Of a stretch of DNA of 64,000 bases, positions 20,340 through 61,375 are shown piece after piece; within the stretch, counting starts at the first letter, position 1; the number at the start of each line of letters is the position of its first letter. Below the pieces are notes generated by a model, which worked only from the letters and a program-made list of their open reading frames with translations, was not told where the DNA came from and did no database searches. Source of the DNA: Macrostomum lignano (lineage: Eukaryota). The position numbers were made by a program, and so were the translations under genes. The stretch is taken from NCBI GenBank assembly GCA_002269645.1, contig NIVC01000075.1, positions 124,001 through 188,000 on the forward strand. The letters run 5' to 3'.

Positions 20340-20387
<48 letters not shown>

Positions 20388-20388
20388 T

Positions 20389-20426
<38 letters not shown>

Positions 20427-20568: not shown

Positions 20569-20616
<48 letters not shown>

Positions 20617-20617
20617 T

Positions 20618-20655
<38 letters not shown>

Positions 20656-20822: not shown

Positions 20823-20873
20823 AAGACTATATGTAACCCCGCACTGTAAATCAGCTGAGACGTCAGGCCTCAC

Positions 20874-21515: not shown

Positions 21516-22434
21516 GGCTCTCTCACCAGCTGCTATGGGATTTATACCCGCGCGCACACAACAGGGGAACCGGTCTGCCCTTCTGGCACACTCCGCACAC
21601 ACGCTTAGCCGGGGGGGGGGGCGGTGGAACTTGGGGGTGGCTGACGGGGGATTAGGCGGGAATGAGACCCTAGCTGAGCCTGAGAGAGAGAGATTTTTCG
21701 GGGGACTGGAGTCGGGGCAGAAAATCGATTGGTATTCTGTTGCGCGAGTAGAGTGGCTTGGCTTTAGACTCCCTTCTTCTTCTTCTTCCTCTCTCCTCCC
21801 CTTTTGCCGCTTTTTCTTTTCCTCGCTTTCTATTTTCCTTGTGGGCAGTTTAGCGACCTAAGTAAATTGGTTCGGCAGTCAGTAGCAGCAGTGTGGAGTT
21901 CTTCTAGTCAGCCAGTGTGCTCTCCGGGGGGAGCAGATTGAATATTGCAATACGCCGAGTGGCTTCCGCGAATCCTTCCTAAAGGGATTATAAAGGCCTG
22001 ACTGGGTTTGCTTGGCTTGCTTTCTTTTTAAAAAGGAGGCAGCAGAGACTGTCGGAATCGAGCCGAAAGGGGAGGTGAGGAGTGCTCCGAGTTGCTCCAG
22101 GGAAAGGGGACGACAAGCCGGGAGCACTGGATAGATGGATGCGATGAGCGAAGGGGGGGCAGACGGAGAGTGAGAGCGCGAGTGAGAAGATTGAATGACA
22201 AGGTCGTCTTGGAGGGGTAGAGATGCGAGAGCAGATCGGATCAAACAGCTGCTGGTGAGACGGTTCGCGCGGACAAAGCAGCAGCATTGACAGAAGCTGA
22301 ATGGCTAGTAGGGGAGAGAGAAACTAGTGTGAGTGAAAGTCAGACCTGATTTGGCCCGAGGCTGGCTAGGACAGGTAGAAAAAACTCGGCTCAGTTCGGA
22401 GTTTGAGAGTGGACTGAGGACCTGACCGGCAACA

Positions 22435-25400: not shown

Positions 25401-26903
25401 TGTGAGGCTGACAATTCACAAGCCTCTAGCTACTATTAGAATTGTGAGGCTGACAATTCACAAGCCTCTAGCCACTATTAGAATTGTAAGGCTGACAATT
25501 CACAAGCCTCTAGCTACTATTAGAATTGTGAGGCTGACTATTCACAAGCCGCTAGCTATTAGAATTGTGAGGCTGACAATTCACAAGCCTCTAGCTACTA
25601 TTAGAATTGTGAGGCTGACAATTCACAAGCCTCTAGCTACTATTAGAATTGTGAGGCTGACAATTCACAAGCCTCTAGCTACTATTAGAATTGTAAGGCT
25701 GACAATTCACAAGCCTCTAGCTACTATTAGAGTTGTGAGGCTGACAATTCACAAGCCTCTAGCTACTATTAGAATTGTGAGGCTGACAATTCACAAGCCT
25801 CTAGCTACTATTAGAATTGTGAGGCTGACTATTCACAAGCCTCTAGCTACTATTAGAATTGTGAGGCTGACTATTCACAAGCCTCTAGCTACTATTAGAA
25901 TTGTGAGGCTGACTATTCACAAGCCTCTAGCTACCATTAGAATTGTGAGGCTGACTATTCACAAGCCTTTAGCTATTAGAATTGTGAGGCTGACAATTCA
26001 CAAGCCGCTAGCTACTATTAGAATTGTGAGGCTGACAATTCACAAGCCTCTAGCTACTATTAGAATTGTGAGGCTGACAATTCACAAGCCTCTAGCTACC
26101 ATTAGAGTTGTGAGGCTGACAATTCACAAGCCTCTAGCTACCATTAGAATTGTGAGGCTGACTATTCACAAGCCTCTAGCTACTATTAGAATTGCGAGGC
26201 TGACTATTCACAAGCCTCTAGCTACTATTAGAATTGTGAGGCTGACTATTCACAAGCGGCTAGCTATTAGAATTGTGAGGCTGACAATTCACAAGCCTCT
26301 AGCTACTATTAGAATTGTGAGGCTGACTATTCACAAGCCGCTACTAGCTATTAGAATTGTGAGGCTGACTATTCACAAGCCGCTACTAGCTATTAGAATT
26401 GTGAGGCTGACAATTCACAAGCCGCTACTAGCTATTAGAATTGTGAGGCCGACAATTCACAAGCCGCTACTAGCTATTAGAATTGTGAGGCTGACAATTC
26501 ACAAGCCTCTAGCTACTATTAGAATTGTGAAGCTGACTATTCACAAGCCGCTACTAGCTATTAGAATTGTGAAGCTGACTATTCACAAGCCGCTACTAGC
26601 TATTAGAATTGTGAGGCTGACTATTCACAAGCCGCTACTAGCTATTAGAATTGTGAGGCTGACTATTCACAAGCCGCTAGCTACTATTAGAATTGTGAAG
26701 CTGACTATTCACAAGCCGCTACTAGCTATTAGAATTGTGAGGCTGACTATTCACAAGCCGCTACTAGCTATTAGAATTGTGAGGCTGACTATTCACAAGC
26801 CGCTAGCTACTATTAGAATTGTGAAGCTGACTATTCACAAGCCGCTACTAGCTATTAGAATTGTGAGGCTGACTATTCACAAGCCGCTATTAGCTATTAG
26901 AAT
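22435..26903. repeat. 42-bp satellite (39-bp variants) with a 1629-bp internal duplication
   Basis: Unit GTGAGGCTGACAATTCACAAGCCTCTAGCTACTATTAGAATT. Rare variants recur exactly 1629 bp apart. Confidence 0.98.
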
Positions 26904-27198
26904 TGAAAATAAGGCTGCGCTACCTCGCAAATTAACAGACTGAATTGATCCATACTGGAACATACAGAAAACTATTTGTCAGACAATAAAGCTAGCAAGC
27001 AGCTTTCCTACAAAGACTTTATTAACATTCGAAGTTGCAGTTGGCAAGTAGATATTTGTTACTTCTGTGTATGCAGTTGTCTGTTTTTGTTAAGGAATTA
27101 GGCAGAAAAACATGTGCCAAATATTGAATCATTTATTAAGGGAAGCAATAATATTATTCTTACGTAGGGGTGACACGATGATTTTAGTTTGAAGATAC

Positions 27199-29197: not shown

Positions 29198-30807
29198 AAT
29201 CTCCGACACTTCATATCTCCGACACTCCATATCTCCGACACTTCATATCCCCGACACTCCATATCTCTGACAGCCCGTATCTCCGACACTTTATATCTCT
29301 AACAGCCCATATCTCCGACACTACATATCTCTGACAGCCCGTATCTCCGACACTCCAAATCTCTGACAGCCCGTATCTCCGACACTTTATATCTCCGACA
29401 CTCCATATCTGTGACAGCCCGTATCTCCGACACTTTATATCTCCGACACTCCATATCTCTGACAGCCCGTATCTCCGACACTCCTTTTCTCTGACAGCCC
29501 GTATCTCCGACACTCCAAATCTCTAACAGCCCGTATCTCCGACACTCCTTTTCTCTGACAGCCCGTATCTCCGACACTCCAAATCTCTGACAGCCCGTAT
29601 CTCCGACACTTTATATCTCCGACACTCCATATCTCTGACAGCCCGTATCTCCGACACTTTATATCTCCGACACTCCATATCTCTGACAGCCCGTATCTCC
29701 GACACTCCAAATCTCTGACAGCCCGTATCTCCGACACTTTATATCTCCGACACTCCATATCTCTGACAGCCCGTATCTCCGACACTTTATATCTCCGACA
29801 CTCCATATCTCTGACAGCCCGTATCTCCGACACTTTATATCTCCGACACTCCATATCTCTGACAGCCCGTATCTCCGACACTCCTTTTCTCTGACAGCCC
29901 GTATCTCCGACACTACAAATCTCTGACAGCCCGTATCTCCGACACTTTATATCTCCGACACTCCATATCTCTGACAGCCCGTATCTCCGACACTTTATAT
30001 CTCCGACACTCCATATCTCTGACAGCCCGTATCTCCGACACTCCTTTTCTCTGACAGCCCGTATCTCCGACACTCCAAATCTCTGACAGCCCGTATCTAT
30101 GACACTCCAAATCTCTGACAGCCCGTATCTCCGACACTTTATATCTCCGACACTCCATATCTCTGACAGCCCGTATCTCCGACACTCCTTTTCTCTGACA
30201 GTTCGTATCTCCGACACTTCATATCTCCGACACTACATATCTCTGACAGCCCGTATCTCCGACACTCCAAATCTCTGACAGCCCGTATCTCCGACACTTT
30301 ATATCTCCGACACTCCATATCTCCGACAGCCCGTATCTCCGACACTTTATATCTCCGACACTCCATATCTCTGACAGCCCGTATCTCCGACACTCCTTTT
30401 CTCTGACAGCCCGTATCTCCGACACTTTATATCTCCGACACTCCATATCTCCGACAGCCCGTATCTCCGACACTTTATATCTCCGACACTTTATATCTCC
30501 GACACTCCATATCTCTGACAGCCCGTATCTCCGACACTCCATATCTCTGACAGCCCGTATCTCCGACACTCCTTTTCTCTGACAGCCCGTATCTCCGACA
30601 CTCCAAATCTCTGACAGCCCGTATCTATGACACTCCAAATCTCTAACAGCCCGTATCTCCGACACTTTATATCTCCGACACTCCATATCTCTGACAGCCC
30701 GTATCTCCGACACTTTATATATCCGACACTTCATATCTCCGACACTTTATATCTCCGACACTACAAATCTCTGACAGCCCGTATCTCCGACACTCCAAAT
30801 CTCTGAC
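29198..30807. repeat. 16-bp-monomer satellite (ATATCTCCGACACT family; 32/48-bp higher-order units), left part
   Basis: Monomers CCATATCTCTGACAGC, CCGTATCTCCGACACT and TTATATCTCCGACACT. The array resumes in register after the LTR element. Confidence 0.97.
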
Positions 30808-31248: not shown

Positions 31249-34200
31249 TCACCCGTAGCTCAGGCGCTCCGGGGGACGTCGAACTCGCGACGATCGGCGC
31301 AGAGACCCGTCGATCTTAGGGTCTCCAGGAGCAGCCAGGTTTGGCGGCTGGTCTACGGCCGGCATCGCAGCTTCCGGCTCAGGTGCGGCCTTGGCGTCGG
31401 TAGCACCGTCTGTCACGCCAGCTCCTGTAGGCCGCGGCTGCTCAGGACCACCGCGGACATGGTCAACGTGCCGCCGCACCACTCGGTCGTCGCCATCGAA
31501 GCCGCACAGGTAGGAGGCCGGACCGGCGGCACCGACAACTCGCGCCGGCTTCCACCGACCTCCGTTGGCTCCAAAGTCTCTGGCCAGTACAGCGTCTCCA
31601 GTCTCGAAGGTCCGGAACCGAGCTTTGCAGTCGTGGTGCTCTTTTAGCTGACTTTGCTTACGCTGTACTCTTGCTCCCAGGTCTGGCCGAGCTCGATCTA
31701 GCAACGTGCACAGTCGCCGTCCCATCAGGAGTTCGCAGGGAGCCACACCAGTTGTCGCATGCGGAGTGACCCGGTAGCTCAGCAGGAACCGGGCGACCTT
31801 ATCCTCCAAGGAGCCTTCGCGCTGCTTCTCCAGGGACCGCTTCAGCGTCTGGACAGCTCGTTCCGCCAGGCCGTTGGACGCCGGATGGTAGGGAGCAACG
31901 CGCACGTGCTGAATGCCGTTCTTCCGCAGAAAGTCGGACATCTCCTCGCTGACCAAGTTGGGCCCATTGTCCGACACCAGCACATCTGGCAACCCGTGCG
32001 TCGCGAAGCTGGAGCGGAGTTTCTGGATGGTGACAGCTGAGGTCGCTGACGTCACCACATGCACATCCAGCCACTTTGAATGGGCATCGACGACGACCAG
32101 CAGCATCTTGCCAGACACCGGACCCGCATAGTCGATATGCACTCGAGACCACGGTCGGTCAGGCCACGGCCACGCCAACATTGGCGAAGGCGCCGGGGCG
32201 TTCTGCAACTCCTGACAGTCAGAGCAGGCCTTGGCCAGGTTTTCAATCTCCGAGTCTAATCCTGGCCACCAGAAATAACCTCGGGCTAACGTCTTCATGC
32301 GTGACGCCCCCGCATGACCTTGATGCAGCACCTGGAGCAGTGCAGCTCGCGCTCCGACCGGGACCACCACTCGAGCGCCCCACAGGAGGCAGCCGTCTTG
32401 CACACTGAGCTCAGCCGCTCTCTTGGAGTATGGCAGCAGATCGTCACTGACCCGCTCTGGCCAGCCGATTTGCGTGAAGTGCAGAGCTCGGGCTAGTGTG
32501 GGGTCCCTTCGAGTCAGGCCGCGTATCTGAGCTGCCGTGACAGGTCCATCGTCCAGGTGGTCCATCAGCATGACCAGCTCTGCCAGCTTCGGGACCGTCG
32601 CCGGCTTGTCGGGCAGCGGCAGGCGACTCAGGGCATCGGCGCACAGCAGTGAGGCTCCGGCTCGGTGAACCATGCGGTAGTTATAGCCAGACAGCAGCAG
32701 AGCCCACCTCTGAATTCTTCCAGATGCCAGGGCCGGCACGACCTTGTTCTCAGCAAGCAATCCAAGCAGAGGTTTGTGGCCACTCACCAGCAGAAATGGG
32801 CGGCCGAACAGGTACGCGTTGAACTTCTTGACCGCAAACACTACCGCGAGGGCTTCCTTCTCGAGCTGCGAGTAGTTTTTCTCAGCGTCATGCAACGTAC
32901 GCGAGGCAAAGGCCACAGGCCGGACAGCTCCATCGATCCTGTGGCTGATGACCGCGCCCAGACCGTAGGGGGACGCGTCGCACTCGAGCAGCAGGTCTTC
33001 GCTCGGGTCAAAGTGCGCCAAAACCGGAGCCGAAGACAGCAGGGCCTTGCACTTCTCAAAAGCGGCGTTCTGAGCAGCGCCCCAGTTCCAGCGGTGTTGC
33101 TCGCGCAGCAGCAGGTGCAGCGGTGCCAGGACTTGAGACAAATTAGGTAGGAACTTGCCATAGTAGTTCACCATGCCTAGGAAGCTGCGCAGCTGAGTTG
33201 CGTCCTTGGGAGCTGGAGCGCTGACAATTGCCTCGACTTTGTCTTTGATCGGGTGCAGGCCGTCGGCATCGATGCGGTGACCGAAATAACTGACGCTCGT
33301 CTGCATGAACTGACACTTCTCCAGTTTGCACCGGAGGCCACTCTGGCTCAGCTTCTCCAGAACCTGCTCCAGGGAGTTCAGATGACTGCTGTCGTCCTTT
33401 CCGGTGATGATGAGGTCATCGATGAAGCAGGCGGTGCTGGTGATTCCTTGCAGCAAGCAGTCCATCCGGCGCTGGAAAATCCCGACCGCTGGCGAGACAC
33501 CGAAGGGCAGCCGCGTGTACCGAAGCAGCCCTTTGTGCGTATTGATTGTGCAGACTTCCTGGGAGGCCTCATCGAGTGGCAGCTGCATGTACGCCTGCGA
33601 CAAGTCGAGCTTAGTGAAGAGCCGCCCACCAGTCAGCTTCGCGAACAGCTCTTCGATCCGCGGCAGAGGATACGAGTCGGGCTCCACGTTCGGGTTGACG
33701 GTCTGCTTGAAGTCGGCGCAGACCCTCACAGAGCCGTCGGACTTGAGCACTGGCACCACCGGCGATGCGTACTCGGAGTGCTACACGGGCACCAGGATTC
33801 CTTGTTCGATCTCGCGGTTCAGTTGGCTCTCCACCTTGTCCTTCAAAGCGAATGGGAGATTCCTGGCCTTCATAAAGCGGGGTTGAGCATCGGGTTTCAT
33901 ATTCAAACTCACTGGCGGTCCGTTGTACTTTCCTAGCTCAGGCGAAAAAACATCGCTGTACTTGTCGAGCAGCTGCTGCAGTCTGGGCGACACCCCTGGA
34001 GCAGCCGCCACCTGCTTGATTGATCTCCAGTCGAGCCGCAACTCGGACAGCCAGTCTCTTCCGAGCAGGTCGGATCCGCAGCCGGCGACCACAAGGAGGC
34101 TGAGTGACTTGGGCGGTGCTTCAGCAGCTTCCACAGCAACGCAGATGCAGCCTTCAATTGGCACTTTCTCACCGGAGTATGTTCGCAGCTGCATGGACGC

Positions 34201-35166
34201 AGGCTGCAGTGCTGGCTGGGAGTTGAGCACGGTCCTGTAGGTCTTCGAGGATACAAGGGACACGGAGGCTCCGGTGTCCACTTCCATGACAACAGGTCGG
34301 CCATTGATGCGCACCGTCGTTGTAATTGGCGGCACCTTCGACACTCGCTTGCCGGACAGCTGGTACAGAGAGTGGGCCGTTTCCTCCTCGCAGCTGTCTT
34401 TTTCCTCGCCGTCCTGCATCTGCAGAGCCTCTCTTCTATCGTCCTTCGACTGGGATTTGCAGGCAGCCGCAGTGTGGCCGGTCTTTGAGCACTTGTAGCA
34501 CTTCTGGGTGGCGAACGGGCACTTATTAGCGAGATGCTTCGTTGACAGGCACCTGAAGCACCTCCTCGTCGAAGATGACTTCTGCTGTTGCTTGACAATG
34601 CTGACGGACTCCTGACTGACTGGATCTGGCTTGCTCGCTCCCGACACCAGCTGGCAGCCCTTGGCAGCGGACTCGTGGGCCAGCTTCAATGCCTTCGCTA
34701 GAGTGAGATCGGGCTCCGCCAGCAGCCGCCGCTGAGCGCTGTCGTTGTTGATTCCCAGCACCAGCCTGTCGCGAAGCATCGAAGTCAGGCTGTCGCCGAA
34801 CTTGCAGTCGCGAGCCAGGTCTCGGAGGTCTGCGACGAAGTCCGCGACGCCCTCACCTTCCCTGCGATTTCTGGTGTAGAATCGGTAACGATGGACGATC
34901 TCGGACTCCTCAGGCTCGAAATGGCTCTTAAGTGCTTCGCAAATTTCGGTGTAGCTCTTGGCTGATGGCTGGGCAGGAGACAGAAGACTGAAGGCCAGAT
35001 GGAAGACTTTCTTGCCGCATGAACTCAGCATAATCGCTCGCTTTTTCGCTTCCTCAGTGACGTCATTGGCAACAAAATATTGTTCTAACCTTGCTTGGTA
35101 CATATGCCACGGCTCAGAGCCTTCTTCGTAGGGGCCGACAAGCCCTAGTGCACTTGCACTACTCAT
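31249..35166 (-). pseudogene. gag-pol single reading frame (1305 codons) broken by one in-frame TAG at 33781-33783
   Basis: Two CCHC knuckles (CFRCLSTKHLANKC, CYKCSKTGHTAAAC), protease DTGAS, RT FIDD, RNase H CDASPYG, integrase H-H-C-C finger and D,D(35)E core (HIDYAGP, SDNGP, ERAV). The ORFs 33781-35166 and 31249-33759 are in the same frame. Confidence 0.92.
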
Positions 35167-35391: not shown

Positions 35392-36160
35392 CTGACAGCC
35401 CGTATTTCCGACACTTTATATCTCCGACACTCCATATCTCTGACAGCCCGTATCTCCGAAACTTTATATATCCGACACTTCATATCTCCGACACTACATA
35501 TCTCTGACAGCCCGTATCTCCGACACTTCAAATCTCTGACAGCCCGTATCTCCGACACTTTATATCTCCGACACTACATATCTCTGACAGCCCGTATCTC
35601 CGACACTCCATATCTCTGACAGCCCGTATCTCCGACACTCCTTTTCTCTGACAGCCCGTATCTCCGACACTTTATATCTCCGACACTACATATTTCTGAC
35701 AGCCCGTATCTCCGACACTTTATTTCTCCGACACTCCATATCTCTGACAGCCCGTATCTCCGACACTTTATTTCTCCGACACTCCATATCTCTGACAGCC
35801 CGTATCTCCGACACTCCTTTTCTCTGACAGCCCGTATCTCCGACACTACATATCTCTGACAGCCCGTATCTCCGACACTCCAAATCTCTGACAGCCCGTA
35901 TCTCCGACACTTTATATCTCCGACACTCCATATCTCCGACACTTTATATCTCCGACACTCCTTTTCTCTGACAGCCCGTATCTCCGACACTCCTTTTCTC
36001 TGACAGCCCGTATCTCCGACACTTCATATCTCCGACACTCCATATCTCTGACAGCCCGTATCTCCGACACTTCATATCTCCGACACTCTATATATCCGAC
36101 ACTTTATATCTTCGACACTTCATATCTCCGACACTCCATATCTTTGAAAGCCGTATCTCC
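35392..36160. repeat. Same 16-bp satellite, right part
   Basis: Continues CTGAC|AGCCCGT after the TSD. Confidence 0.97.
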
Positions 36161-36874
36161 GACACCTAACAAAACCTAACCGAACCCTAACGGAGATACA
36201 TTTATGAAGTTCGTTGCTAAGCTTGTCAGAGATATGAGGTGTCAGGTCTGAGGCGTCGGAGATACCAAGTGTCAGAGGTATGATGTGTCGGAGTTGTGAT
36301 GTGTCGGCTGCTAAACGAAGTGTCGGAGATACGAATGCGCGACCCGAGAAAGTCAGGGCCGTTGTGCACCCTGTGTGAGCGTGTGCCTGCGTACATGTCC
36401 GTGTGCATGTACAGGGCCAGGGGTATGGGCCCGACTGCTTGCCTCCTCGCTTGATTGGCGGCAATGCTTAAAACCCCCCGGCAAACTAAGCAATACCTTT
36501 CCATGAAAATACGGGCCGAATACATGCATAATTTTGACGGCACAATTGAATGCTGACTTGACACGCTGGCCAGCCCTTATAAAACACTTATAGGATGCAA
36601 CGCCTGCTTAAAATTGATGTCATCATTTGCCAAGTGGCAGAGCAAGAACAAACAGCATTAGAAATGCAAAAGCACATTTATTTGCATATCGACAGCCTAC
36701 TGTATGCGATTGGTACACAGATGCCCGGGACTGGGTGAGCATTCAAATGTGTTCGCAATAACCCGACACAGATGCTACTTTATTACGGGTTAAGATGCTC
36801 CAAAGCGGCCTGCACTGATCATATCATAATGAGAAGCAGTTCCAGGGAAAAAGATAAAAACAAGAACAGGTAGA

Positions 36875-40292: not shown

Positions 40293-40367
40293 CCTTCAGA
40301 TCTACTTAGAATATAGTAGAAGCTTTGCGGCAACTTTAAAAGCCTTTTTATACTGCAGACCACTTAC

Positions 40368-40922
40368 CAACGGTTTGAGCTTGGACACGGTCGGGCACTG
40401 GAATCGAACTTCGGCCCCGCCAACCGGATGGCAACCACGCCGTTCGAGACTCAACTCGGAGCCCGAATCGCGGCCAAGAAATCGCCGCAGCAACGGTAGG
40501 CAAGAGTAACTAACAGCTTCAACGCTGGGATCCATAGAGTTGTTTGACACGCCAGTCAGTTTAACACTAAGCGACCGCTTGCCAAACGGGCCAAGCAGCA
40601 TGAGCGGCTCCAGATAGTAGCCAATGCCCCGCTCAGCACAGCAATCGAATTCGAACTCGCCGCCAGTAAGTATACCCGGCCTGACCAGCACAACAGTGCC
40701 TGTCTCGCTAATTCTAACCATAGTGCCATTGGTAATCTGCTCAATCAAGCGCAGATAGCTGATCTCGAATTCGCGCACGCCGGGATTCTCTAGCTTAGCT
40801 CGAATTGACGAGATTTTCACCGGCTTACCAGTGAGGATTGACAGGGCGATTCGGCTGCGAAATTCTGAACAGCCAACGAACTTTAATAGCTCAGCTGGGG
40901 CCGCGGCAGACGAATTCGACAT
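40368..40922 (-). CDS. rcl1: RNA 3'-terminal phosphate cyclase-like protein, exon 1
   Basis: FRSRIALSILTGKPVKI..IR...PG..EFE.S.LRL..ITNGT...GT...PG.L.GG...DC...RGIGYYLE matches the RCL1 N-terminus. Donor TTG|gtaagt. Confidence 0.95.
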
Positions 40923-44534: not shown

Positions 44535-44589
44535 CTGCAATACAAAATAATATTTTACAATTGGCCCCAAGGACCTGAAGATTTGAGAG

Positions 44590-44972
44590 GCTGGCGCAGC
44601 AACTGAGGATCTGGGAGGTAAGGCCAGCAACTGAGGATCTGGGAGGCTGATCCAGCAACTGAGGATCTGGGAGGCTGGGCCAGCAACTGAGGATCTGGGA
44701 GGCTCGCCCAGCAATCGAGGATCTGGGAGGCTGGCCCAGCAACTGAGGATCTGGGAGGCTGGCCCAGCAATCGAGGATCTGGGAGGCTGGCCCAGCAATC
44801 GAGGATCTGGGAGGCTGGCCCAGAAATCGAGGATCTGGGAGGCTGGCCCAGAAATCGAGGATCTGGGAGGCTCGCCCAGCAATCGAGGATCTGGGAGGCT
44901 GGCCCAACAATCGAGGATCTGGGAGGCTGGCCCAGCAATCGAGGATCTGGGAGGCTGGCCCAGCAATCGGGG
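44590..44972. repeat. 28-bp minisatellite of the same family as 3803-4572, in reverse orientation on the + strand
   Basis: GAGGATCTGGGAGGCTGGCCCAGCAA is the reverse complement of the 3803 unit. Confidence 0.95.
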
Positions 44973-44983
44973 ATCTCACTCAC

Positions 44984-47380: not shown

Positions 47381-47536
47381 TAGCTGCGGTTCGACTGTCG
47401 CCCAGATCTACGACCAATACCTCTATGCTTAACAAAGTTTGTTTTCACTGTGAGATTTCACTGAGAGTTGTTCCGGTTCCAGTACCCAAATCCCGCACAA
47501 GAAGGCAATATTGCTTATTGGAATAAAAGTAATTAC

Positions 47537-49562
47537 CTTCTTCATTCCGCTCTCCATTGTCGGGCACTTCGTCATCGTGTAGCTCAGCGGAATTCCCTGC
47601 GCACTCTACTTCTGGCCTGGGTTCGGAATAATAATACGGGCTAGTACTAGAGCCGCCAGTGCCATTATTTCTGCCATTAGTACTACTGCCGCCATTAACA
47701 ATAGCACCAGCTGCAATACAATCGGACACTGGCACTATTACAGGATGATGCATTGGCTGCATTGACATTGTCACTGGCGGCTGCTGACTGGGATGAGGCC
47801 CATGGTGATAACTAGTTGGCGGCGGCATCTGCGGCTGGCCATAGACTAAATGCTGCGGCGGCGGTTGCTGACCGGGCGCCGGTAGGAAATGCGGGCCAAT
47901 CATACTTGATAGATCCAGCTGCATCGGATGCTGCGGATGATGCTGCTGCTGCCGCTGCGGATGATGATGAGGCGCCGCGTACAAACCGGAGTGGGAATAA
48001 TCCGATTGGGCATAGTCAGACATTGGCGGAGCGTGCGACATGGCGTGATGATGGTGAGGATGATGATGATGATGATGCGGTGGCGGATGCTGATGATGGC
48101 CATACTGCAGGGGCATGGACTGGCTGACCTGCGGAATAGGCGGTGGCAGCATCATGGACTGAGGCGGCGGCGGCGGCGGATGAGTCTGGTGATGAAGCTG
48201 ATGCTGCAGCTGCATTGGCAGCGATATTTGCTGAGAGTACAATTGCAACTGGTGCTGTTGTTGCAACAAATGTTGCTGCTGTTGCTGCTGCTGCTGAACG
48301 GAGACACTCGAGGAGGTCGGACTAGTGACCTGGGAGCCGGGCAAGGACGCAGCCCGTACAGCGTTCCGATCCACGAGCACAACAACTTGATCGTTGTCTT
48401 CGTCGTCCTCGGCATAATCCAGCCCCTCGGCATCGCTGTCAACAGCGCGGCCGCCGTTTAACATACCGGCTTCATCGTCGGCAATGGGGCGCAACATGCC
48501 CTGACAGATTAGCGGCGCGAACTCTTCTTCAAATGGCGATATTGCGTTCAAAGCAACTGAGGGCGCGGATGAACGCGCCGCCGCGGTAGTGGCACTGAAT
48601 GTGTACACCTGGCGCGGCAGGTCGGGATTCTCCTGCAATCGAATGTCCCGATGATGAGAAGCAGCATGACTGCTAACCGTTTCTTTAACGGCTCCGGTCA
48701 GCAAGTCGGAGAAATCCGCAGCCAATTTAGCTGCAAAATCTTCGTCAACAACGGCATGGTCAGTTTCGGTGTCATTATCGGGCCAGGCTTCGACACGCAG
48801 CACCCGCCTAGATCGGAATCGGCACTCGCCAGCTGATCGCAATAGAAACGCTCGACCATCTTGGCCGCCAATGCGATTTGCGAACCAATTTGGGTCTTTT
48901 AGCACAGCCTGTTGAGCTGGTTCCGCTAAGCAGCACTCAAAGCTGAGCTCAGGCACAGCCGAATACCTGGTATCGGATTCAGCATCCACTATGCGATCTC
49001 TACTGATGTTTTCAGTTTTGCCAAGATCAAAGAATCGAACTGACACGCTGGCGGATGATTCGGAGAGGACTCGCCCGCGACCCCAGGTGCCGTCGCGACT
49101 CATGGCGTACACTCGCTGATCCGGACGCAGCGCCAATGGGGAAGTTGCCTTAGCAGAGCAAGCTTCAAGAACAGTTCGAAAGCCCGGCTCAACAGCTCTG
49201 CGCAGTTGTAAATCAGACTGGATATGGCTGATCAGCTCGAATCGGACTGGGGATGCCTGGCAAGCTGTAAATATGCCATACGGGGACAGATCGGACAGTA
49301 GGCAGCAGCGAACTATAGGCCGCCGAGATTTGTCACTGTTTGCGGTTAACGATTTCAAATCTTTAGCAAGATAATTGAAAGCCGTCTGACCGAGTGCGCC
49401 GTCGCATTCCTGTCTGACAGAGAGCTTATCTAAGCGATGCTTCAATTCGGTTAGGCTAGCAAGTATGTCGGAATTGGCTGGCAACGGCAAAGCGTACCAA
49501 CCAGTCGGGTCGGTGTCCATCAGATTCTCCGAGGGTAAGCAGCGCTGGAGGCTGGGCTTCAT
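47537..49562 (-). CDS. Tudor protein, large exon with an extended Tudor domain and a Q/H/P-rich region
   Basis: tctcag|ATG. Tudor-like VYAMSRDGTWGRGRV..VSVRFFDLGKTE..YSAVPELSFECCLA. Donor G|gtaatt, phase 1. Confidence 0.88.
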
Positions 49563-50356: not shown

Positions 50357-53300
50357 CTGTTAATGGAAAAATGGATGCAATATGAAACATAAATTATTCT
50401 TTACATCTTTTTGTAACATAAATTAGCAAAAAACAGAGCTGTCAGTTCTTAATGTTGCCTGTCTTAATTACAATATAATAAATTTTGTTTTTAACAATTT
50501 CTCAATAGATAAATACAGTGCTGCTCTCTCTATTATATATATAGGGAAAACATTCTAGAAAGTCCATGCTAAGACTTCCAAAAACTGCAAAAACTTTTCC
50601 ACTTAACTAAGTTTTAATATTGATAATCAGCTTATCTAAAAAAGGTATTGCTAAGAAATAAAAATATAAAAATAGCATCAAGAATATATGCCTATATAAA
50701 TTTATTTTGTAACTTGAATAAAGATAGCCACAAAATTAGGCATTTTTGTTTTAAACTTGTTGGGTATAATTTTGATTTTGGCTAATACACTTTTTCAGGT
50801 ACATTGATGCCCAAAATTTTAGGCTCATGATAAAAGAATTGTTAGAATCTTTTGCTCTGCTATATATGTTGCACATTTTAAAAAAAGGTTCAAGTTCTAT
50901 TTTCATTATATTGTCAGATGAATGCTTGAACCTTGAATTGAATGCAAATAGTGCCTTAGTCAAAATAGTATACAAAAGAAAGAACTTGAAAGGTATGTTA
51001 GAGACTTATCACCTTAACAATGGACTAAGCACTACTAAGATAAGGATAGAATACTACAATTATTAGGAAGTTGCAACTAGTGAATCTATATAAATTGATA
51101 ATATACCTAAAAAAAAGTCAACATAGAAAGAGGCAAATCTAAATCTGCCCATATTAACTTGTCCCCAACCTCTAGTGTCTACCTTATAGGTCTTATAGGT
51201 TTGTCTTATCATTAAACTTGTAGGCTCCACAGATCACCCTTTCTTTATTTGATTGCTAACCTGTCAGTTAGCAACCCTCTAAACACCAAAAACACAGTCT
51301 TTTACATTGGTTAATATTGATTGAAGACTTAAGAAGGCAATGCAATAGGTATATTCTTATTGTACCTGCCTCTAGTATAGATTCTAAGCATTTTTTTAAT
51401 GCTAAGATAATGATTATAGCTAAAAAGAGAAATTGGCTCTTAGCTAAAACTGTGCAACAGCTATTGTTTATCAAAGCTAATTTGAACTTGAAGCTATAAA
51501 TATGTTTAATAAATAATAACACCTTTAAATATTTTGAATATGAATAACCAAAGCCAAGAACAAATAAGAATCAAATATAAAACTTTCTTCAAAGTCTGCA
51601 TATATGATTGCTTTATTGGCTTCAAAACTTTGGGTGATTTATAGGTTTTGGGTCTAGATGAATTATTATTTCAAGTTTTAAATATCAGTTAAAATCATTT
51701 TAGGTCTTAAAGCTTAAAATGCTCAGAAGCTTAAACATAAAAATTTAGTCTATAAAAATTCAGAACTTAGTCAACTATAACAAATATTAGGTTAGTTATC
51801 TCATTTATTTATCATCATACAAAAATTTAATCTCTTATTGCTAGACTTAAAAAGTCTTGCATTTTATACTATATATTTAACTTAACAAATGCAAATAATA
51901 TAGTTGTATATCCTAAAAATATTGACTTTATCATAAACTAAATAACTTCCTAGCTTGTAATATTTAAAGTTAATTAAGGCACTTTTAATAAGATCATATT
52001 GCCAAGGACATTCACACTATTAGGGCTATTGATTGGGTAGCCTGCCTAATTAAAAGGGCAATTTTCTACTATTGTTATTTATTGCTATAGTGATTATACT
52101 ATATACAATAAATCAATTATTGTTAAGATAAATGTAAAAAGTAATATTAGGGCTTAAATAATTACATGACAATATAAATAGTGAAGCTATTATTTTTATA
52201 GTGATTTTATCAATGACTAAATGGCTATTTTAGCCATTGAAAGTAATATTATCACATTATATTTATAATTAAGTTAGATGAAGCCCATACTCTCAATAGA
52301 ATATACCCTAAAAATTCAGGTATACATTAGCATTAGCCTTGTATGCCAAGTCAAATATGTATAGTTGGCAATTTGGCATGTATGATTCTTAACAACATAG
52401 TGTGCATACACACCTGGCATGTACTTTTTAGAATCACATAAAAGAGTTGCTATAAAAAAGATAGAAAAATTCACTTTTAAGCGTAAATTTCAAGTTTTCT
52501 AGTTTTTAGCTTGTAATAAGACAGTCAAACAAATGTTTATACATATTAATTTTCCACTCTAAATAGTATTAGCAAGAAAGATAAATAATCAACCAAATTA
52601 TCAGCCAAAAACATTTTTATAGAACTCAAAAAATGTCATTTATTGTTGCAACACTGGCCTAGACAAGTGTGGGCACTAGGCATGCATTTACTATGGGCTA
52701 GGGCCTAAGATAAGGGACGTTATCCTGAAGATTCCCGCATTTAATTATAACCCCCACCCCCCATGGCCACCACCCTTGAATAGAGGGCAAAATAATTTGT
52801 AAAATAATTAAACGCAGGAATCTTCAAGATTGCCAGATAAGGATGGTCAGTTAAAAACTATAAGTTACTATAACTATTGTATCATTCACTCTTATTTTTA
52901 CTCTTATATTTACAGTACAGCTTCTTAGAATCTGTTAACGTCAAAGTAGTGGCTCTAAATTTTGGCAATAAGATGGCCGCCATCTCTATTGCTGAATGGA
53001 TTCTATATTAGTGACATGGCCACCTTCTATGTCTTTAAGTTTGAACCCATTCAAATATTCAATGCTAACGACACGGCCGCTGGCGATGTGCAGGGTTCCC
53101 ACTCTCGAGTGTGACACAACGGAAACGGCCGCCGTCTGTAAGTTTTTGCATTATAGACACGGCCACCGTGTATTTAAGCGTGGCCTTTGTTTTATATGTT
53201 GACCGTAGAAATAGTGTCATTTTGACGATTAATACGGTCACATTACAATAACAACTGCCAATTAAAAAACGAAAATTCCCTAGGCAGGCTAGGCTAAGCT

Positions 53301-53391
53301 GTCCATAATATGTCATGACAGATAAGACAGAACCCAAATATGCTCAAAATGTGAATCATTACTAGTTTCCACCGCAAAATGCGATACTTAC

Positions 53392-53452
53392 TTGTCGTGC
53401 ACCCTGTACAGTAGATTGTAGGAGGATTTTCTTTACACCTAGAACACTTCAT
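53392..53452 (-). CDS. B-box/coiled-coil/Tudor protein, first coding exon (B-box, first half)
   Basis: MKCSRCKENPPTIYCTGCTT, donor A|gtaagt (phase 1). Acceptor ttctcag at 53474-53476. Confidence 0.7.
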
Positions 53453-54450
53453 GTTCTCTCTGTGGTGCAATACCTGAGAAAATGAAAATGAAAACAAGCC
53501 TAGTTTTAAATAAAAATTTTATGTATATAAACAAAATGTGTACAATTTAGTGTAAATATATTGGGAAAGTTTAATTAACTACTTCTCTTGCTTACCACAT
53601 CTTAAAAAATTGATAGAAAATTGCGCAGTGTAAATGTTCATGTTAATAAAAAAACAAGATTCAAAAGCCGTTGGATGTCCACGACAGGGTTTGAAGTATT
53701 GAAGAGTGAAGACTATCAAAACACGCGCTTCTGATTGCGGATTATTTATTTGTACAATCCTTGCCGATCGATCTAAAAACGCGAGAGAGACACAAGAATT
53801 TTATACGACCCACAGCTTCACTACACTGTAAATTTGACTGAGTCTTGATTGCTTTCCATTTCAAATTTATTCTTCAAAATTTAAATTCATACTGTATTGA
53901 ATACTGTATTGAATACTGTATTGATTAATTGAGAGAGAAACCAACTGAGAGACCAACACTGTATCGCGTCACTCACTGTGCGCGGGCCCAATTTGCTACA
54001 TGAACAACCGCGTGGTAGAATCAAACTATATATATAACTGTACATGTAGTGTGCTAGAAAAACTACTAAACTCTGAGATTAACTTCAGGCTTCATTCCAG
54101 TCTCTAAATTGGCATCCCCTTTCGGAGAACATGTATGTACACATAACTTATTGTATAAGTTAGAGATTAGTAGGTATCCGTCTGTATCTTAATATATACA
54201 TGTATGTACAAAAAGAGAATTGCATGCAAGTTTGATTTAACTCCTCGAGTGTTTGATAGCAGACAGAAAAGAGTTCGGTGTATTTGTCGACGTCGTAATT
54301 TTTCCATTAAATCAAACCAAACAAAATACATCAGTAAAATTTATCCAGCACAACTAGACGACATAGAATCAGCCATGCCAGTATTTTAATCTCCCAATTA
54401 GTACGAGCACAGCACTATACTACTGCATGCTACTACTGTTTGAACTGACA

Positions 54451-54872
54451 TCAGTAGCCTTTGCAGAACACTCTGGCATCGCACATGCGTCTGCAACAAA
54501 GCGACATGGCCACGTGCGCGTGAATTCCTCGTTTAATTATTGTCGCCTCATCCGGCAGGTCGTAGTCGTCTAGAAGCTCGTCAGTTGATTTCTCGCTAGT
54601 AGGATTGCCGGATCTCTTTTTCCAAGGTGGCGGAGCGCTTAGCGGCAGATATCCCTGAGCCGGATCGATGTAGCCGTCTTTGATTCCGAAGCTCTCCAGG
54701 TGTTTGATTGACCGGCAGAGCCAGTCTATCATGACGGGACTGGCCGGACCGCAATAAAGGAATTTGCCTTTATGCTGTGACTCAGCGCTGGTTTGACAGC
54801 AGCTGATAGACATGACCATCAGACTCAGCAGGAGCGCAAGGCCTTGGCTCTTCCGTCCGGATAGAAGGTTTA
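54451..54872 (-). CDS. Insulin-like prepropeptide, main exon (signal h-region, B chain, C peptide, A chain)
   Basis: Hydrophobic GLALLLSLMVMSIS; B chain LYCGPASPVMIDWLC (C-x11-C starting CG, as in insulin); basic sites KKR and KR; A chain GIHAHVAMSLCCRRMC (GI start, CC-x3-C). Acceptor tttttag|TA, phase 1. Confidence 0.85.
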
Positions 54873-55127
54873 CTAAAACAAAGGATATAAAACGTTACAT
54901 GAGCGTATACAACAATGAGAAGTGAGTGCCGGTCTTAAGAAGCAAAGCCAGGAGGGCAAAAAATGGAAAGTTGAATGAAGTATGATAATCATTACAGTGA
55001 AGGGTTCACATTCTGAAAGTAGAGCTACAATTTTGAGAAATCTAAAGTCAATAACTGGGGAAAAGTAGCTATTTAGTGGCTAACACGTCCTGAATGCATT
55101 GGCATTGGCGGAATGAGCATGATTTAC

Positions 55128-55181
55128 CGATAGCCCCTTCACTTGGCTGTGGGTCAACCTGTAGAAGTATCAGAAGCCCTC
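55128..55181 (-). CDS. Insulin-like peptide, possible 54-nt cassette exon
   Basis: ttttgcag|GA..G|gtaaat, symmetric phase 1. Only this frame is open (GLLILLQVDPQPSEGAI). Confidence 0.45.
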
Positions 55182-55309
55182 CTGCAAAACGAATTACAAT
55201 TCAGCGACACAGCAACATAACATTGGCACGCTGTAGCAAAGCGTCTCAATTTCTACCTACTAAAAATTAATGACGCGAAAATGTACATGTCAGGTGAACA
55301 AAAACTTAC

Positions 55310-55319
55310 CGTTACCCAT
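55310..55319 (-). CDS. Insulin-like peptide, start exon (ATG GGT AAC G)
   Basis: ATG followed by the donor G|gtaagt in phase 1, which supplies a Met upstream of the signal h-region. Confidence 0.6.
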
Positions 55320-58703: not shown

Positions 58704-59739
58704 CTATGAGCACGGCACACTTATCGCATTTATAAAATAAATCAAAGGCGCACGGGGAGGGCCATAAACAAAGAAGTACAAAGTACAAGTACACAACACT
58801 GAATAGTCAGGGCTCATAGAGGTGGGATATGTGAAATTCTGAGTCTTTAGTCTCATAGAGAATCGCTGACATACCAAAACTTAACGTGCTGATTGCTGAA
58901 CTTTTTTGGCTCATGGAAGAATGACTAAACTGCTGTGACTTTCAGCAGGTTTAGAGTTAGTGCTTAGGATAGGGGTATTAGGCTCAGGGTTAGGGTTCAA
59001 CCTTAAGAGAATCACCCTGCTAATCATTAAATGTTTATAGAGGAATCGCTCTATAATCATAGATACTCATAGGCTCATGAAGGAAATCGCTTGAACTCTG
59101 CGGCTTAGGGGAATTGTTCACATGCTGAGGCTCATGGAAGGATTGCTGATATCCTAAACCCCCCTCGAACCACCCCCCCCCCCCGGAAAGCTAGCCCCCT
59201 AATTGTATTGGTTCGTGAGAAGATCGCTGAAATGCCAAAGCTCATTGGGGAGTGGCTTAAATCCTTTGGCTCATGGGGGTTTCACAGATGCTTTGAGCCA
59301 AAGCTCATAGGGGATCTGATATCTTAGTCTGGACAGTTGTCTTAATAACTTAATGATTGAAGGCTTTAAAAATTAATGTGGGGCGCAGATTTCTAGTTCA
59401 GTGCTAAATTTACCCCTTCATTGGAGCAAAGGAGAGTTGTCTTATATATTTATAAGTCCACTACAAACAGGTGTCCTTGGTGTGAAATAATAACTCACTT
59501 CATACTGCTTTAAACTTTTCATACGCATTTTAAAGCAGTATAGAAATAAGACATATAAAGTGGCTCGCTGGTTCACGTCAAATTGGCTGTCGACTACTGT
59601 GCCATAAAGAGTGACACCGTGGTATTTAATATTTTTACATGTATATGATTTGTATACTTTTCAGCCAACCATTGGTGCTAATATCTTCTATCTAATTTAA
59701 AGAACAAACTAAAAATTAGATCTTAACAAAGAGGCTCAC

Positions 59740-60250
59740 AAATCTAAGTCGTCCGGGTCGCCGACTCCTACCGCATACAGCGTAACATTGTCGTTTTTTA
59801 TATCCGACACTGCTTGAAACAGTACTTTGGCGTCGTTGCTCCCACCATCCGTGATGATAACGACGGCTTTGAAAACGTTTCTTCGGCCTTTTGAGTTAAA
59901 AAGCTTCTTGACTTCTTTGAGGGCGGAACCAGTGTTCGTGCCCCGAAACTCATACTTATCTAAAGTCTTGCTTTCGTCAACCTTTCTTATAATTTCGAAG
60001 ACGTCGAACTCATCGCCAAGGTTTACAAGCATTTCTAGCAGATCCCTCACATGCGTTTTTGATCCTGAGTAAGACAAATAGCCATTGAAGGATAGCACGC
60101 CAATCCGAACATTTCTCTCTCCAATGTTTAGCGACCGGATTATTGCCTTCGCTGAGTCCACAACAGTGCTGTAGTGACTAAGAATGCTACCAGATTTATC
60201 CAGCATTATCACCACATCTGCGACTTGATCTTTGCACTCGCTTGCTCTGA
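59740..60250 (-). CDS. vWA domain exon
   Basis: ttttccag|TC. ADVVIMLDKSGS (MIDAS DxSxS), GTNTGSAL, VVIITDG, LYAVGVG. Donor TT|gtgagc, phase 2. Confidence 0.92.
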
Positions 60251-60272
60251 CTGGAAAATAGACATCCTTGCA

Positions 60273-61198
60273 GACTGACTGACTGACTGACTGACTGACT
60301 GACTGACTGACTGACTGACTGACTGACTGACTGACTGACTGACTGACTGACTGACTGACTGACTGACTGACTGACTGACTGACTGACTTGAGTGAGTGAG
60401 TGACTGACTGACTGACTGACTGACTGACTGACTGACTGACTGACTGACTGACTGACTGACTGACTGACTGACTGACTGACTGACTGACTGACTGACTGAC
60501 TGACTGACTGACTGACTGACTGACTGACTGACTGACTGACTGACTGACTGACTGACTGAGTGACTGACTGACTGACTGACTGACTGACTGACTGACTGAC
60601 TGACTGACTGACTGACTTGAGTGAGTGACTGACTGACTGACTGACTGACTGACTGACTGACTGACTGACTGACTGACTGACTGACTGACTGACTGACTGA
60701 CTGACTGACTGACTGACTGACTGACTGACTGACTGACTGACTGACTGACTGACTGACTGACTGACTGACTGACTGACTGACTGACTGACTGACTGACTGA
60801 CCTGAGTGAGTGAGTGAGTGAGTGACTGACTGACTGACTGACTGACTGACTGACTGACTGACTGACTGACTGACTGACTGACTGACTGACTGACTGACTG
60901 ACTGACTGACTGACTGACTGACTGACTGACTGACTGACTGAGTGACTGACTGACTGACTGACTGACTGACTGACTGACTGACTGACTGACTGACTGACTT
61001 GAGTGAGTGACTGACTGACTGACTGACTGACTGACTGACTGACTGACTGACTGACTGACTGACTGACTGACTGACTGACTGACTGACTGACTGACTGACT
61101 GACTGACTGACTGACTGACTGACTGACTGACTGACTGACTGACTGACTGACTGACTGACTGGCTAATTGACGAATGAGTGACTGACTGGCTGACTGAC
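60273..61198. repeat. (GACT)n microsatellite, ~925 bp, filling a vWA-gene intron
   Basis: Direct; produces the SQSV ORF. Confidence 0.98.
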
Positions 61199-61375
61199 TG
61201 GCATTAGTTGGAAGAACAGGAAACTCACAGCAATTCACTTTGTGCTTCTCCTCATATGTCACGCACGACTGTTTCTTTCGGTCGAGAAACTGCAGCGTCT
61301 CAACGATTTCCGAATTGCCGTCAGCTTGGCATGAGCCAATGCTTCGCTCCATCTTGTAGCAGGAATGTTTCTCGG
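61199..61375 (-). CDS. vWA/Cys-rich extracellular protein, Cys-containing exon upstream of the vWA domain
   Basis: acttgcag|CC (phase 1). EKHSCYKMERSIGSCQ..SCVTYEEKHKVNCCEFPVLPTNA. Donor A|gtcagt, phase 1. Confidence 0.65.

What the first reader, a model, noticed from the sequence alone, without database searches (positions are those of the whole stretch)
54431..54560. Insulin-like peptide with a UGA at the conserved A-chain Tyr-Cys position: possible selenocysteine or readthrough insulin
Seen: the B chain has canonical C-x11-C. After KR the A chain reads GI..CC-RRM-C-DARVF-C-KGY-TGA-TGT-CAG-TTC-AAA-CAG-TAG-TAG. Known: insulin-family A chains are CC-x3-C-x8-C, usually ending Y-C. If TGA is the stop, the last spacing shrinks to x5, which is very atypical. 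If TGA is decoded, the chain ends ..F-C-K-G-Y-U-C-QFKQ, with U just after the Tyr (x9) and a double TAG behind it. Both readings give an even Cys/Sec count (6 or 8). Inference: this is either a Sec/readthrough ILP with an extra bond, a naturally compact x5 A chain, or a nonsense allele or sequencing error. I found no canonical SECIS by eye: the only ATGA, at 54092-54095 (-), lacks the 3' GA partner.
Basis: partly seen in the sequence, partly recalled or inferred. Interest (0 to 1): 0.75.

Follow-up and report, generated by a model that had tools for sequence, protein, structure and literature searches.

The report
Ordinary stop in flatworm insulin-like gene
The TGA is an ordinary stop codon ending a small secreted, insulin-like-looking hormone precursor gene of the flatworm Macrostomum lignano; there is no selenocysteine or readthrough, only an unusually short cysteine spacing that the gene's paralogues also have.

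Summary
On the minus strand a two-exon gene (Macrostomum lignano BOX15_Mlig028676g4, "hypothetical protein") encodes a signal peptide, a B-like domain (C-x11-C), KKR, a variable spacer, KR, and an A-like domain GIHAHVAMSLCCRRMCDARVFCKGY. Then come TGA, TGT CAG TTC AAA CAG and TAG TAG.

- A paralogue of 74% identity (six copies, five in tandem) also ends ...CRRLCDARVFCKGY-TGA, but the next codon is TAG.
- Identity falls from 81% in the last 84 coding bases (11 synonymous codon changes, 2 conservative replacements) to 25% just after TGA.
- No SECIS appeared in Rfam searches of the window or the paralogue loci, nor in a loose pattern scan.
- An ATTAAA block shared by both paralogues 60-70 nt after the stop suggests a very short 3'UTR.
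- A 99.9% identical second contig and all paralogue copies carry TGA, so it is not an assembly error.

What remains is a Macrostomum-restricted six-cysteine prohormone-like family with an insulin-like layout and a conserved CC-x3-C-x5-C spacing. Insulin-family membership is unproven: no Pfam hit, weak hhalign, unusable AlphaFold models. Interest is low.

The parts
55310..55319 (-). Exon 1 coding part: ATG GGT AAC G (Met-Gly-Asn plus the first base of Val4); the GT donor follows at 55309-55308
   Evidence: Sequence (GTCATGGGTAACG|GTAAGT). It matches the N-terminus MGNVNLL of the database protein P0001.
54873..55309 (-). Intron of 437 nt (GT...polypyrimidine tract-AG) that interrupts the signal-peptide codons
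   Evidence: Acceptor TTTGTTTTAG|TAAACC. Joining the exons reproduces P0001 exactly.
54784..54872 (-). Rest of the predicted signal peptide (..VNLLSGRKSQGLALLLSLMVMSISCCQTSA). Cleavage is predicted after TSA (ASA in the paralogue), so the CC pair here is not in the mature peptide.
   Evidence: Translation and alignment A1. The cleavage site is inferred from the -3/-1 rule and was not computed with a predictor.
54622..54783 (-). B-chain-like domain ESQHKGKFLYCGPASPVMIDWLCRSIKHLESFGIKDGYIDPAQGYLPLSAPPPW, with C-x11-C and Gly after the first Cys
   Evidence: 51 of 54 residues are identical in the paralogue.
54613..54621 (-). KKR, a conserved basic processing site (predicted prohormone-convertase cleavage)
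   Evidence: Invariant K88 K89 R90. Cleavage is inferred.
54535..54612 (-). C-peptide-like spacer SGNPTSEKSTDELLDDYDLPDEATII; acidic and poorly conserved, with indels relative to the paralogue
   Evidence: about 20% identity and 5 residues longer than the paralogue spacer.
54529..54534 (-). KR dibasic site (RR in the paralogue) before the A-like domain
54454..54528 (-). A-chain-like domain GIHAHVAMSLCCRRMCDARVFCKGY, with CC-x3-C-x5-C
   Evidence: 24 of 25 residues are identical in the paralogue, and the KR-plus-A-domain codons carry 11 synonymous changes.
54451..54453 (-). TGA, the true stop codon
   Evidence: TGA is conserved in the paralogue, where TAG follows directly. Identity drops from 81% to 25% across it. 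No SECIS was found.
54430..54450 (-). Untranslated TGT CAG TTC AAA CAG TAG TAG, the start of the 3'UTR and not a conserved extension
   Evidence: The paralogue has no counterpart; it reads TAG GAA TTA GCT....
54385..54390 (-). ATTAAA inside an 11-mer, GATTAAAATAC, shared with the paralogue at a similar offset (+60 against +69 after the stop); probable poly(A) signal, implying a 3'UTR of roughly 80-100 nt
   Evidence: these are the only shared 9-mers at matching offsets in the first 300 nt downstream. The function is inferred; no transcript data were available.

Best explanation
The TGA at 54453-54451 (minus strand) is a normal translation stop. It ends a two-exon nuclear gene of Macrostomum lignano that encodes a 143-residue secreted precursor.

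The precursor layout is a signal peptide, a conserved B-like domain (C-x11-C), KKR, a fast-evolving acidic spacer, KR, and a conserved C-terminal A-like domain (CC-x3-C-x5-C) ending in KGY.

The most likely mechanism is inferred, not shown. The signal peptide is removed, six cysteines form three disulfides, and prohormone convertases cut at KKR and KR/RR and release the spacer. The result would be a two-chain, insulin-like secreted peptide whose last A-chain Cys lies three residues earlier than in every canonical insulin-family member.

This short spacing is the native state of a small Macrostomum-specific gene family: this single-copy gene plus a tandemly amplified paralogue. The codons after TGA are 3'UTR.
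For: - Organism and gene: the protein is 100% identical to M. lignano BOX15_Mlig028676g4 and lies on NIVC01000075.1.
- Paralogue P0003 (74% identity) has six gene copies, five of them in tandem on one contig. It ends CRRLCDARVFCKGY-TGA-TAG.
- The last 84 coding bases are 81% identical between the two genes. Of 13 changed codons, 11 are synonymous and 2 are conservative (K>R, M>L). The 83 bases after TGA are 25% identical, which is random, and the global alignment collapses exactly at TGA.
- The six paralogue copies differ from each other at up to 5 sites, all third codon positions. Their flanks are only 92-96% identical. This indicates purifying selection on a protein that ends at KGY.
- No SECIS was found: Rfam at gathering thresholds on the whole window, Rfam at E<=10 on 52500-54700 and on the paralogue loci, and a loose core-plus-helix pattern scan of 1 kb after the stop in both genes.
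- The +4 base is U in both genes, which is not the leaky UGA-C context. The first 120 nt after the stop fold no better than shuffles (z -1.5 and +0.57) and the folds are not shared.
- Both genes share ATTAAA 60-70 nt after the stop.
- Domain conservation fits a processed prohormone: B-like 94%, A-like 96%, spacer about 20% with indels, basic sites kept.
Against: - No transcript, ribosome-profiling or peptide data could be examined, so the 3' end, the processing and the disulfide map are all inferred.
- There was no positive control showing that the Rfam SECIS models or my scan detect M. lignano SECIS elements.
- The only comparison is within one species, paralogue against paralogue. No orthologue from another species was found.
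- The insulin-like reading lacks statistical support. Pfam Insulin gave no hit even at E<=10, hhalign probability was 6.4%, and the AlphaFold models had pLDDT 46-47.
Confidence: 0.9

Rival explanations
1. Selenocysteine insertion: UGA is decoded as Sec, giving ..FCKGY-U-CQFKQ with a fourth (selenyl-sulfide) bridge.
For: Only suggestive. TGA follows Tyr near where insulin has Tyr-Cys, a Cys codon follows it, and the Cys+Sec count would be even.
Against: - No SECIS at any threshold, in the window or in the paralogue loci.
- In the paralogue the codon after TGA is TAG, so the product would have 7 Cys/Sec and no partner Cys.
- Downstream identity is random at 25%.
- The probable poly(A) signal at +60 leaves too little room for a SECIS (inference).
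- The U would sit at x9, so the canonical x8 is not restored either.
Confidence: 0.01
2. Programmed or leaky stop-codon readthrough in this copy only, producing a minor C-terminally extended isoform (+x-CQFKQ).
For: Six in-frame codons, counting the UGA itself, precede a double TAG. Basal UGA readthrough occurs at low levels in all eukaryotes (general knowledge).
Against: The extension is not conserved in the paralogue, which reads TGA TAG. The +4 base is U rather than C, and there is no significant or shared downstream structure. Nothing points to selection on the extension.
Confidence: 0.03
3. Assembly or sequencing error, or a private nonsense allele of an original TGY Cys codon.
For: None beyond the atypical spacing.
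Against: The same TGA is found in the window (which matches NIVC01000075.1), in the 99.9% identical contig NIVC01003242.1, and in six paralogue copies on two further contigs. The coding sequences are under purifying selection.
Confidence: 0.01
4. Ancient truncation: an ancestor had a longer A chain whose last Cys codon (TGY) mutated to TGA before the two paralogues split, and the x5 Cys took over the bridge. TGA is a plain stop today but marks a lost Cys.
For: The Tyr-stop resembles insulin's Tyr-Cys ending. Schistosome ILPs keep C-x8-C (PMC5391603).
Against: The position is x9, not x8. No outgroup sequence is available, so this is pure speculation. It does not change how the gene is decoded now.
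Confidence: 0.07
5. Not an insulin relative at all: a lineage-specific secreted cysteine-rich protein, for example a gland or reproductive secretion, whose Cys pattern only resembles insulin by convergence. It may not be cleaved into two chains.
For: - No Pfam Insulin hit and no relatives among 1.8 billion representative proteins.
- hhalign probability of 6.4%.
- The PROSITE-type x8 spacing is not met.
- Two prolines sit inside the would-be B helix (CGPASPV), and there are 8 rather than 3 residues between GI and CC.
- There is no intron in the C-peptide region, unlike schistosome ILP genes.
Against: The full layout is hard to reach by chance: signal peptide, C-G-x10-C, a basic site, a divergent spacer, a dibasic site, GI...CC-x3-C...C at the very C-terminus, and six Cys. 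The pattern is unique in the window.
Confidence: 0.4

Closest known systems
Insulin/IGF/relaxin superfamily prohormones (Pfam PF00049; PROSITE PS00262), including flatworm ILPs such as Schistosoma SjILP/SmILP and planarian ilp-1
   Same: Both have a signal peptide, a B-C-A precursor order, a B-chain C-G-x10-C (C-x11-C), conserved basic cleavage sites around a poorly conserved spacer, an A domain that starts GI and contains CC-x3-C, six Cys in the mature part, and an A domain at the extreme C-terminus.
   Different: - The last A-chain spacing is x5 instead of the invariant x8; schistosome ILPs have CCC-x2-C-x8-C (PMC5391603).
- There are 8 residues between GI and CC.
- Two prolines lie in the B-helix region.
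- The B domain has a long C-terminal tail.
- There is no Pfam hit, while nine reference insulin-family sequences all hit PF00049.
- There is no intron in the spacer.
Eukaryotic selenoprotein genes (in-frame UGA plus a 3'UTR SECIS)
   Same: Only an in-frame TGA followed by a few sense codons and a Cys codon.
   Different: There is no SECIS, the sequence downstream of the UGA is not conserved, and the paralogue has TGA TAG.
Tandem back-up stop codons
   Same: In the paralogue TGA is followed directly by TAG. In the window copy a TAG TAG pair lies six codons downstream of TGA, after five sense codons.
   Different: Nothing functional was tested. This is a descriptive resemblance only.

Membership tests
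Eukaryotic selenoprotein gene | SECIS stem-loop (AUGA core, unpaired AA/CC, GA partner) in the 3'UTR | tested here: not met
   Rfam, all families including the SECIS models: nothing at gathering thresholds on the whole window. No SECIS at E<=10 in 52500-54700 or in loci L001, L006 and L007. My own loose scan of 1 kb after the stop gave 0 hits in all three. Caveat: there was no flatworm SECIS positive control.
Eukaryotic selenoprotein gene | Coding-type conservation continues past the UGA, which aligns to Cys or Sec in homologues | tested here: not met
   The paralogue has TGA followed by TAG. Identity is 81% before the TGA and 25% after it.
Programmed stop-codon readthrough gene | Conserved in-frame extension up to the next stop | tested here: not met
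   The window has a 5-codon extension; the paralogue has none.
Programmed stop-codon readthrough gene | Leaky stop context (such as UGA-C or UGA-CUAG) or a stimulatory 3' RNA structure | tested here: not met
   The context is UGA-U in both genes. Fold z-scores are -1.5 and +0.57 and the structures are not shared.
Insulin/IGF/relaxin superfamily | Secreted precursor with B-C-A order and basic processing sites | tested here: met
   By inspection of the translation and the paralogue alignment: a hydrophobic N-terminus with T/A-S-A, a conserved KKR and a KR/RR around a divergent spacer. Processing itself was not tested.
Insulin/IGF/relaxin superfamily | B chain C-x11-C with Gly after the first Cys | tested here: met
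   CGPASPVMIDWLC.
Insulin/IGF/relaxin superfamily | A chain CC-x3-C-x8-C (PROSITE PS00262-type signature; the signature is recalled from memory) | tested here: not met
   CC-RRM-C-DARVF-C gives x5, in both paralogues. All nine reference sequences in alignment A2 have x8.
Insulin/IGF/relaxin superfamily | Significant match to the family profile (Pfam PF00049) or to family members | tested here: not met
   Pfam gave 0 families at E<=10. A PDB sequence search with the profile gave 0 hits at E<=10. HMMER against 1.84 billion representative proteins found no insulin-family hit. hhalign against nine insulin-family sequences gave a probability of 6.4% and aligned only KRGI..CC..C.
Insulin/IGF/relaxin superfamily | Insulin fold with A6-A11, A7-B7 and A20-B19 disulfide connectivity | tested here: inconclusive
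AlphaFold2 single-sequence models had mean pLDDT 46.1 and 47.2.
Insulin/IGF/relaxin superfamily | Signals through an insulin-receptor tyrosine kinase or a relaxin-type GPCR | not testable with these tools
   This needs a binding or signalling assay.

The most novel reading that the evidence does not exclude
This is a genuine but highly divergent branch of the insulin superfamily, restricted to Macrostomum. Its A chain has lost one helical turn before the last cysteine (CC-x3-C-x5-C), yet it still forms three insulin-type disulfides. The branch has been tandemly amplified, with at least six paralogue copies. If so, it would be the first natural insulin-fold peptide that departs from the otherwise invariant x8 spacing.
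Probability: 0.45. Interest if true: 0.4.

Novelty: new variant of a known kind. Interest (0 to 1): 0.2.

Why it matters
A selenocysteine-containing insulin would have been remarkable, but it is not there. That part of the finding can be closed as an ordinary stop codon.

What remains is of modest, specialist interest. Genes annotated only as "hypothetical protein" in the regeneration and sex-allocation model M. lignano look like an unrecognised family of insulin-type prohormones. The family shows strong purifying selection, tandem amplification, and a cysteine spacing that breaks the signature used to detect insulin-like peptides.

If confirmed, this would show that motif- and Pfam-based ILP surveys miss such genes in flatworms. 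It would also offer a natural test of how much the insulin A chain can be shortened.

Tried and rejected
- **Pfam scan of the precursor at E<=10:** no family.
- **Word-indexed search of 5.8 billion proteins:** only the protein itself, an older truncated gene model (P0002) and one paralogue, all from M. lignano.
- **Full HMMER profile search of 1.84 billion representatives:** only the query's own cluster, plus three long unrelated proteins at E 6e-5 to 4e-4 that matched in several short stretches; I took these to be spurious.
- **PDB sequence search with the profile:** nothing.
- **AlphaFold2:** run on the mature proprotein and on the paralogue precursor, giving pLDDT 46 and 47, which is unusable. 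Foldseek against the PDB returned noise.
- **hhalign:** Probability was 6.4%.
- **Literature:** no paper mentions these gene IDs. Nothing specific turned up on Macrostomum ILPs or selenoproteins. The flatworm ILP survey in FEBS J 2014 is not held.
- **An additional 3' exon that bypasses the TGA:** rejected. There is no GT donor at or before the TGA, and the paralogue's coding sequence is intronless and ends at the same place.
- **Mitochondrial or variant genetic code:** rejected. The locus is nuclear, with spliceosomal introns, retrotransposons and nuclear genes around it.
- **SECIS positive control from an M. lignano selenoprotein:** not attempted, because no such locus could be fetched efficiently with the capped searches.

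Full report
**1. What is in the sequence**

The ORF lister gives a 122-residue ORF at 54451-54819. The reading frame stays open upstream as far as a splice acceptor, TTTGTTTTAG|TA, with exon 2 starting at 54872.

The database protein that matches is 100% identical: Macrostomum lignano BOX15_Mlig028676g4, 143 aa, "hypothetical protein". It adds a 10-base first coding exon, ATGGGTAACG|GTAAGT at 55319-55310. The window is therefore nuclear DNA of the free-living flatworm M. lignano. A 2-kb test segment around the gene is found exactly in the locus from contig NIVC01000075.1.

The precursor reads as follows:
- **Signal peptide:** MGNVNLLSGRKSQGLALLLSLMVMSISCCQTSA. Cleavage is predicted after TSA; the paralogue has the classical ASA. 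This is inferred by rule, not computed.
- **B-like domain:** ESQHKGKFLYCGPASPVMIDWLCRSIKHLESFGIKDGYIDPAQGYLPLSAPPPW.
- **Basic site:** KKR.
- **Spacer:** SGNPTSEKSTDELLDDYDLPDEATII.
- **Dibasic site:** KR.
- **A-like domain:** GIHAHVAMSLCCRRMCDARVFCKGY.
- **After the coding sequence:** TGA (54453-54451), then TGT CAG TTC AAA CAG, then TAG TAG.

Two small corrections apply. A decoded UGA would sit at x9, not at the canonical x8. There are three ATGA sites in the first kilobase downstream, not one.

**2. Is the TGA decoded? The paralogue test**

The protein search returned one paralogue, P0003 (BOX15_Mlig014741g1, 126 aa, 74% identity). It is encoded six times: five copies in a tandem array on NIVC01002732.1 and one copy on NIVC01002081.1.

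All six copies end ...TGT CGG AGA CTG TGT GAT GCC AGG GTG TTC TGC AAA GGC TAC TGA TAG GAA TTA GC.... This shows three things:
- The x5 spacing and the KGY C-terminus are shared.
- The stop is again TGA.
- The very next codon is TAG, so there is no CQFKQ extension and no partner Cys.

A codon-by-codon comparison of the last 28 codons gives 11 codons with synonymous changes and 2 with conservative replacements (K>R in the dibasic site, M>L). That is 81% nucleotide identity. The next 83 bases are 25% identical, which is random. A global alignment shows the same cliff exactly at TGA.

Among the six paralogue copies, the coding sequences differ at up to five sites, all of them third codon positions. 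Their flanks are 92-96% identical. Selection therefore acts on a protein that ends at KGY.

**3. SECIS, readthrough signals and the 3'UTR**

- Rfam release 15 found nothing at gathering thresholds in the whole window.
- Rfam found no SECIS family at E<=10 in 52500-54700, which covers all the sequence between the stop and the next gene.
- Rfam found none in the paralogue loci or in L007.
- My own deliberately loose scan found nothing in 1 kb after the stop of either gene, against 0.04-0.1 hits expected by chance. It required NUGA...AA/CC...GA, at least 8 pairs in helix 2 and at least 4 of 7 pairs in helix 1.
- The base after the stop is U in both genes.
- The first 120 nt after the stop fold no better than shuffled sequence (z -1.5 and +0.57), and the two genes do not share a structure.

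The one island of similarity in the otherwise unalignable downstream sequence is GATTAAAATAC, at +60 in the window and +69 in the paralogue. I read it as an ATTAAA poly(A) signal. That implies a 3'UTR of roughly 80-100 nt, which would leave little room for a SECIS. This step is inference, because no transcript data were available.

One caveat: I had no M. lignano SECIS to use as a positive control.

**4. Error or nonsense allele?**

A second contig, NIVC01003242.1, is 99.9% identical over 5.9 kb and carries the same TGA. So do the six paralogue copies. An assembly error or a private nonsense allele is excluded for practical purposes.

**5. What the gene is**

The pattern of conservation is that of a processed prohormone. 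The B-like domain has 51 of 54 residues identical and the A-like domain 24 of 25. The basic sites are kept. The spacer is about 20% identical and carries indels.

The layout matches the insulin superfamily in several respects:
- a signal peptide;
- C-G-x10-C in the B-like domain;
- a basic site, a spacer and a dibasic site;
- an A-like domain that starts GI and contains CC-x3-C...C;
- six mature cysteines.

The composite Cys pattern occurs only once in all six frames of the window.

No statistical test supports family membership, however:
- Pfam gives no hit even at E<=10.
- HMMER against 1.84 billion representative proteins finds no relatives.
- A PDB sequence search finds nothing.
- hhalign against nine insulin-family sequences gives 6.4% probability and aligns only KRGI..CC..C.
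- AlphaFold2 models are unusable, with pLDDT 46 and 47, and Foldseek returns noise.

A defining motif, CC-x3-C-x8-C, is not met. Schistosome ILPs keep x8 (PMC5391603). Other departures are two prolines in the would-be B helix, eight residues between GI and CC, a long B-domain tail, and no intron in the spacer.

I therefore describe it as a Macrostomum-restricted, six-cysteine prohormone-like family with an insulin-like architecture. I do not file it as a proven insulin-family member. I put roughly even odds on true but very divergent homology against convergence.

**6. Mechanism (inferred)**

The steps would be co-translational signal-peptide removal, oxidative folding into three disulfides, convertase cleavage at KKR and KR/RR with loss of the acidic spacer, and secretion of a two-chain peptide. 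Planarian and schistosome ILPs are the nearest functional analogues. Planarian ilp-1 is expressed in the CNS and testes (PMC2953531). Nothing here tells us the tissue or the receptor.

**7. Verdict**

The TGA is an ordinary stop, with confidence of about 0.9-0.95. The headline idea of a Sec or readthrough insulin is refuted, and the sequencing-error idea is refuted too.

The novelty is limited to an unannotated, atypically spaced insulin-like family in one flatworm genus. Interest is low, at 0.2.

Noticed in passing
L001-L005 (NIVC01002732.1, about 17.8-41.3 kb) and L006 (NIVC01002081.1): The paralogue BOX15_Mlig014741g1 is present as a five-copy tandem array with units of about 4-9.5 kb, plus a sixth copy on another contig. 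The units are 92-96% identical, yet all six encode the same 126-aa protein and differ only at third codon positions. Unlike the window copy, the paralogue coding sequence has no intron.
   Followed up: partly
window 22435-26905: A 4.5-kb tandem array of a 42-bp unit (107 copies, 96% matches) creates a spurious 1502-aa ORF. The window as a whole is packed with minisatellites of 12-86 bp periods and two roughly 0.95-kb tetranucleotide arrays, (ACTA)n at 19863-20822 and (GACT)n at 60273-61200.
   Followed up: partly
window 31249-35166 (-): An apparently intact Ty3/Gypsy-type LTR retrotransposon coding region. The gag ORF has a zinc knuckle and an aspartyl protease; the pol ORF has RT, RNase H and integrase. 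It is flanked on both sides by the same 16/32/48/80-bp minisatellite, at 29199-30807 and 35403-36165. GC content rises to 57% here.
   Followed up: partly
window 901-1281 and 3065-3802 (+): Exons of a LIM-homeobox transcription factor gene (a LIM domain and a homeodomain), with minisatellites in and around its introns.
   Followed up: partly
window 19030-21602 (-): Exons of a cAMP-dependent protein kinase regulatory subunit, type II (an RIIa dimerisation domain and two cNMP-binding domains). An (ACTA)n array of about 240 copies fills the intron between them.
   Followed up: partly
window 40302-40922 (-), 13353-13820 (-), 47445-49562 (-), 59736-61352 (-): Other gene fragments: an RNA 3'-terminal phosphate cyclase family protein (RTC/RCL1-like), a protein with a weak TRAF-type zinc-finger match just below the Pfam cut-off (26.0 bits against a cut-off of 27), a Tudor-domain protein with a long Q/H/P-rich tail (the gene just downstream of the ILP-like gene), and a VWA-domain protein (the gene just upstream) whose reading frame runs through the (GACT)n array as (SQSV)n.
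   Followed up: partly
window 52724-52832: A roughly 110-nt hairpin with weak, sub-threshold similarity to plant miRNA precursor models on both strands (best hit MIR5185, 29.8 bits against a gathering score of 101.7, E 0.004). It is probably an inverted-repeat element rather than a miRNA, and it lies inside the neighbouring gene's region.
   Followed up: no
window 3803-4595 (+) and 44580-44976 (-): Related 28-bp minisatellites occur twice, about 40 kb apart and in opposite orientation; their consensus units are similar but not identical. Both give long spurious ORFs in several frames (PASQILSCWASLPDP...).
   Followed up: no
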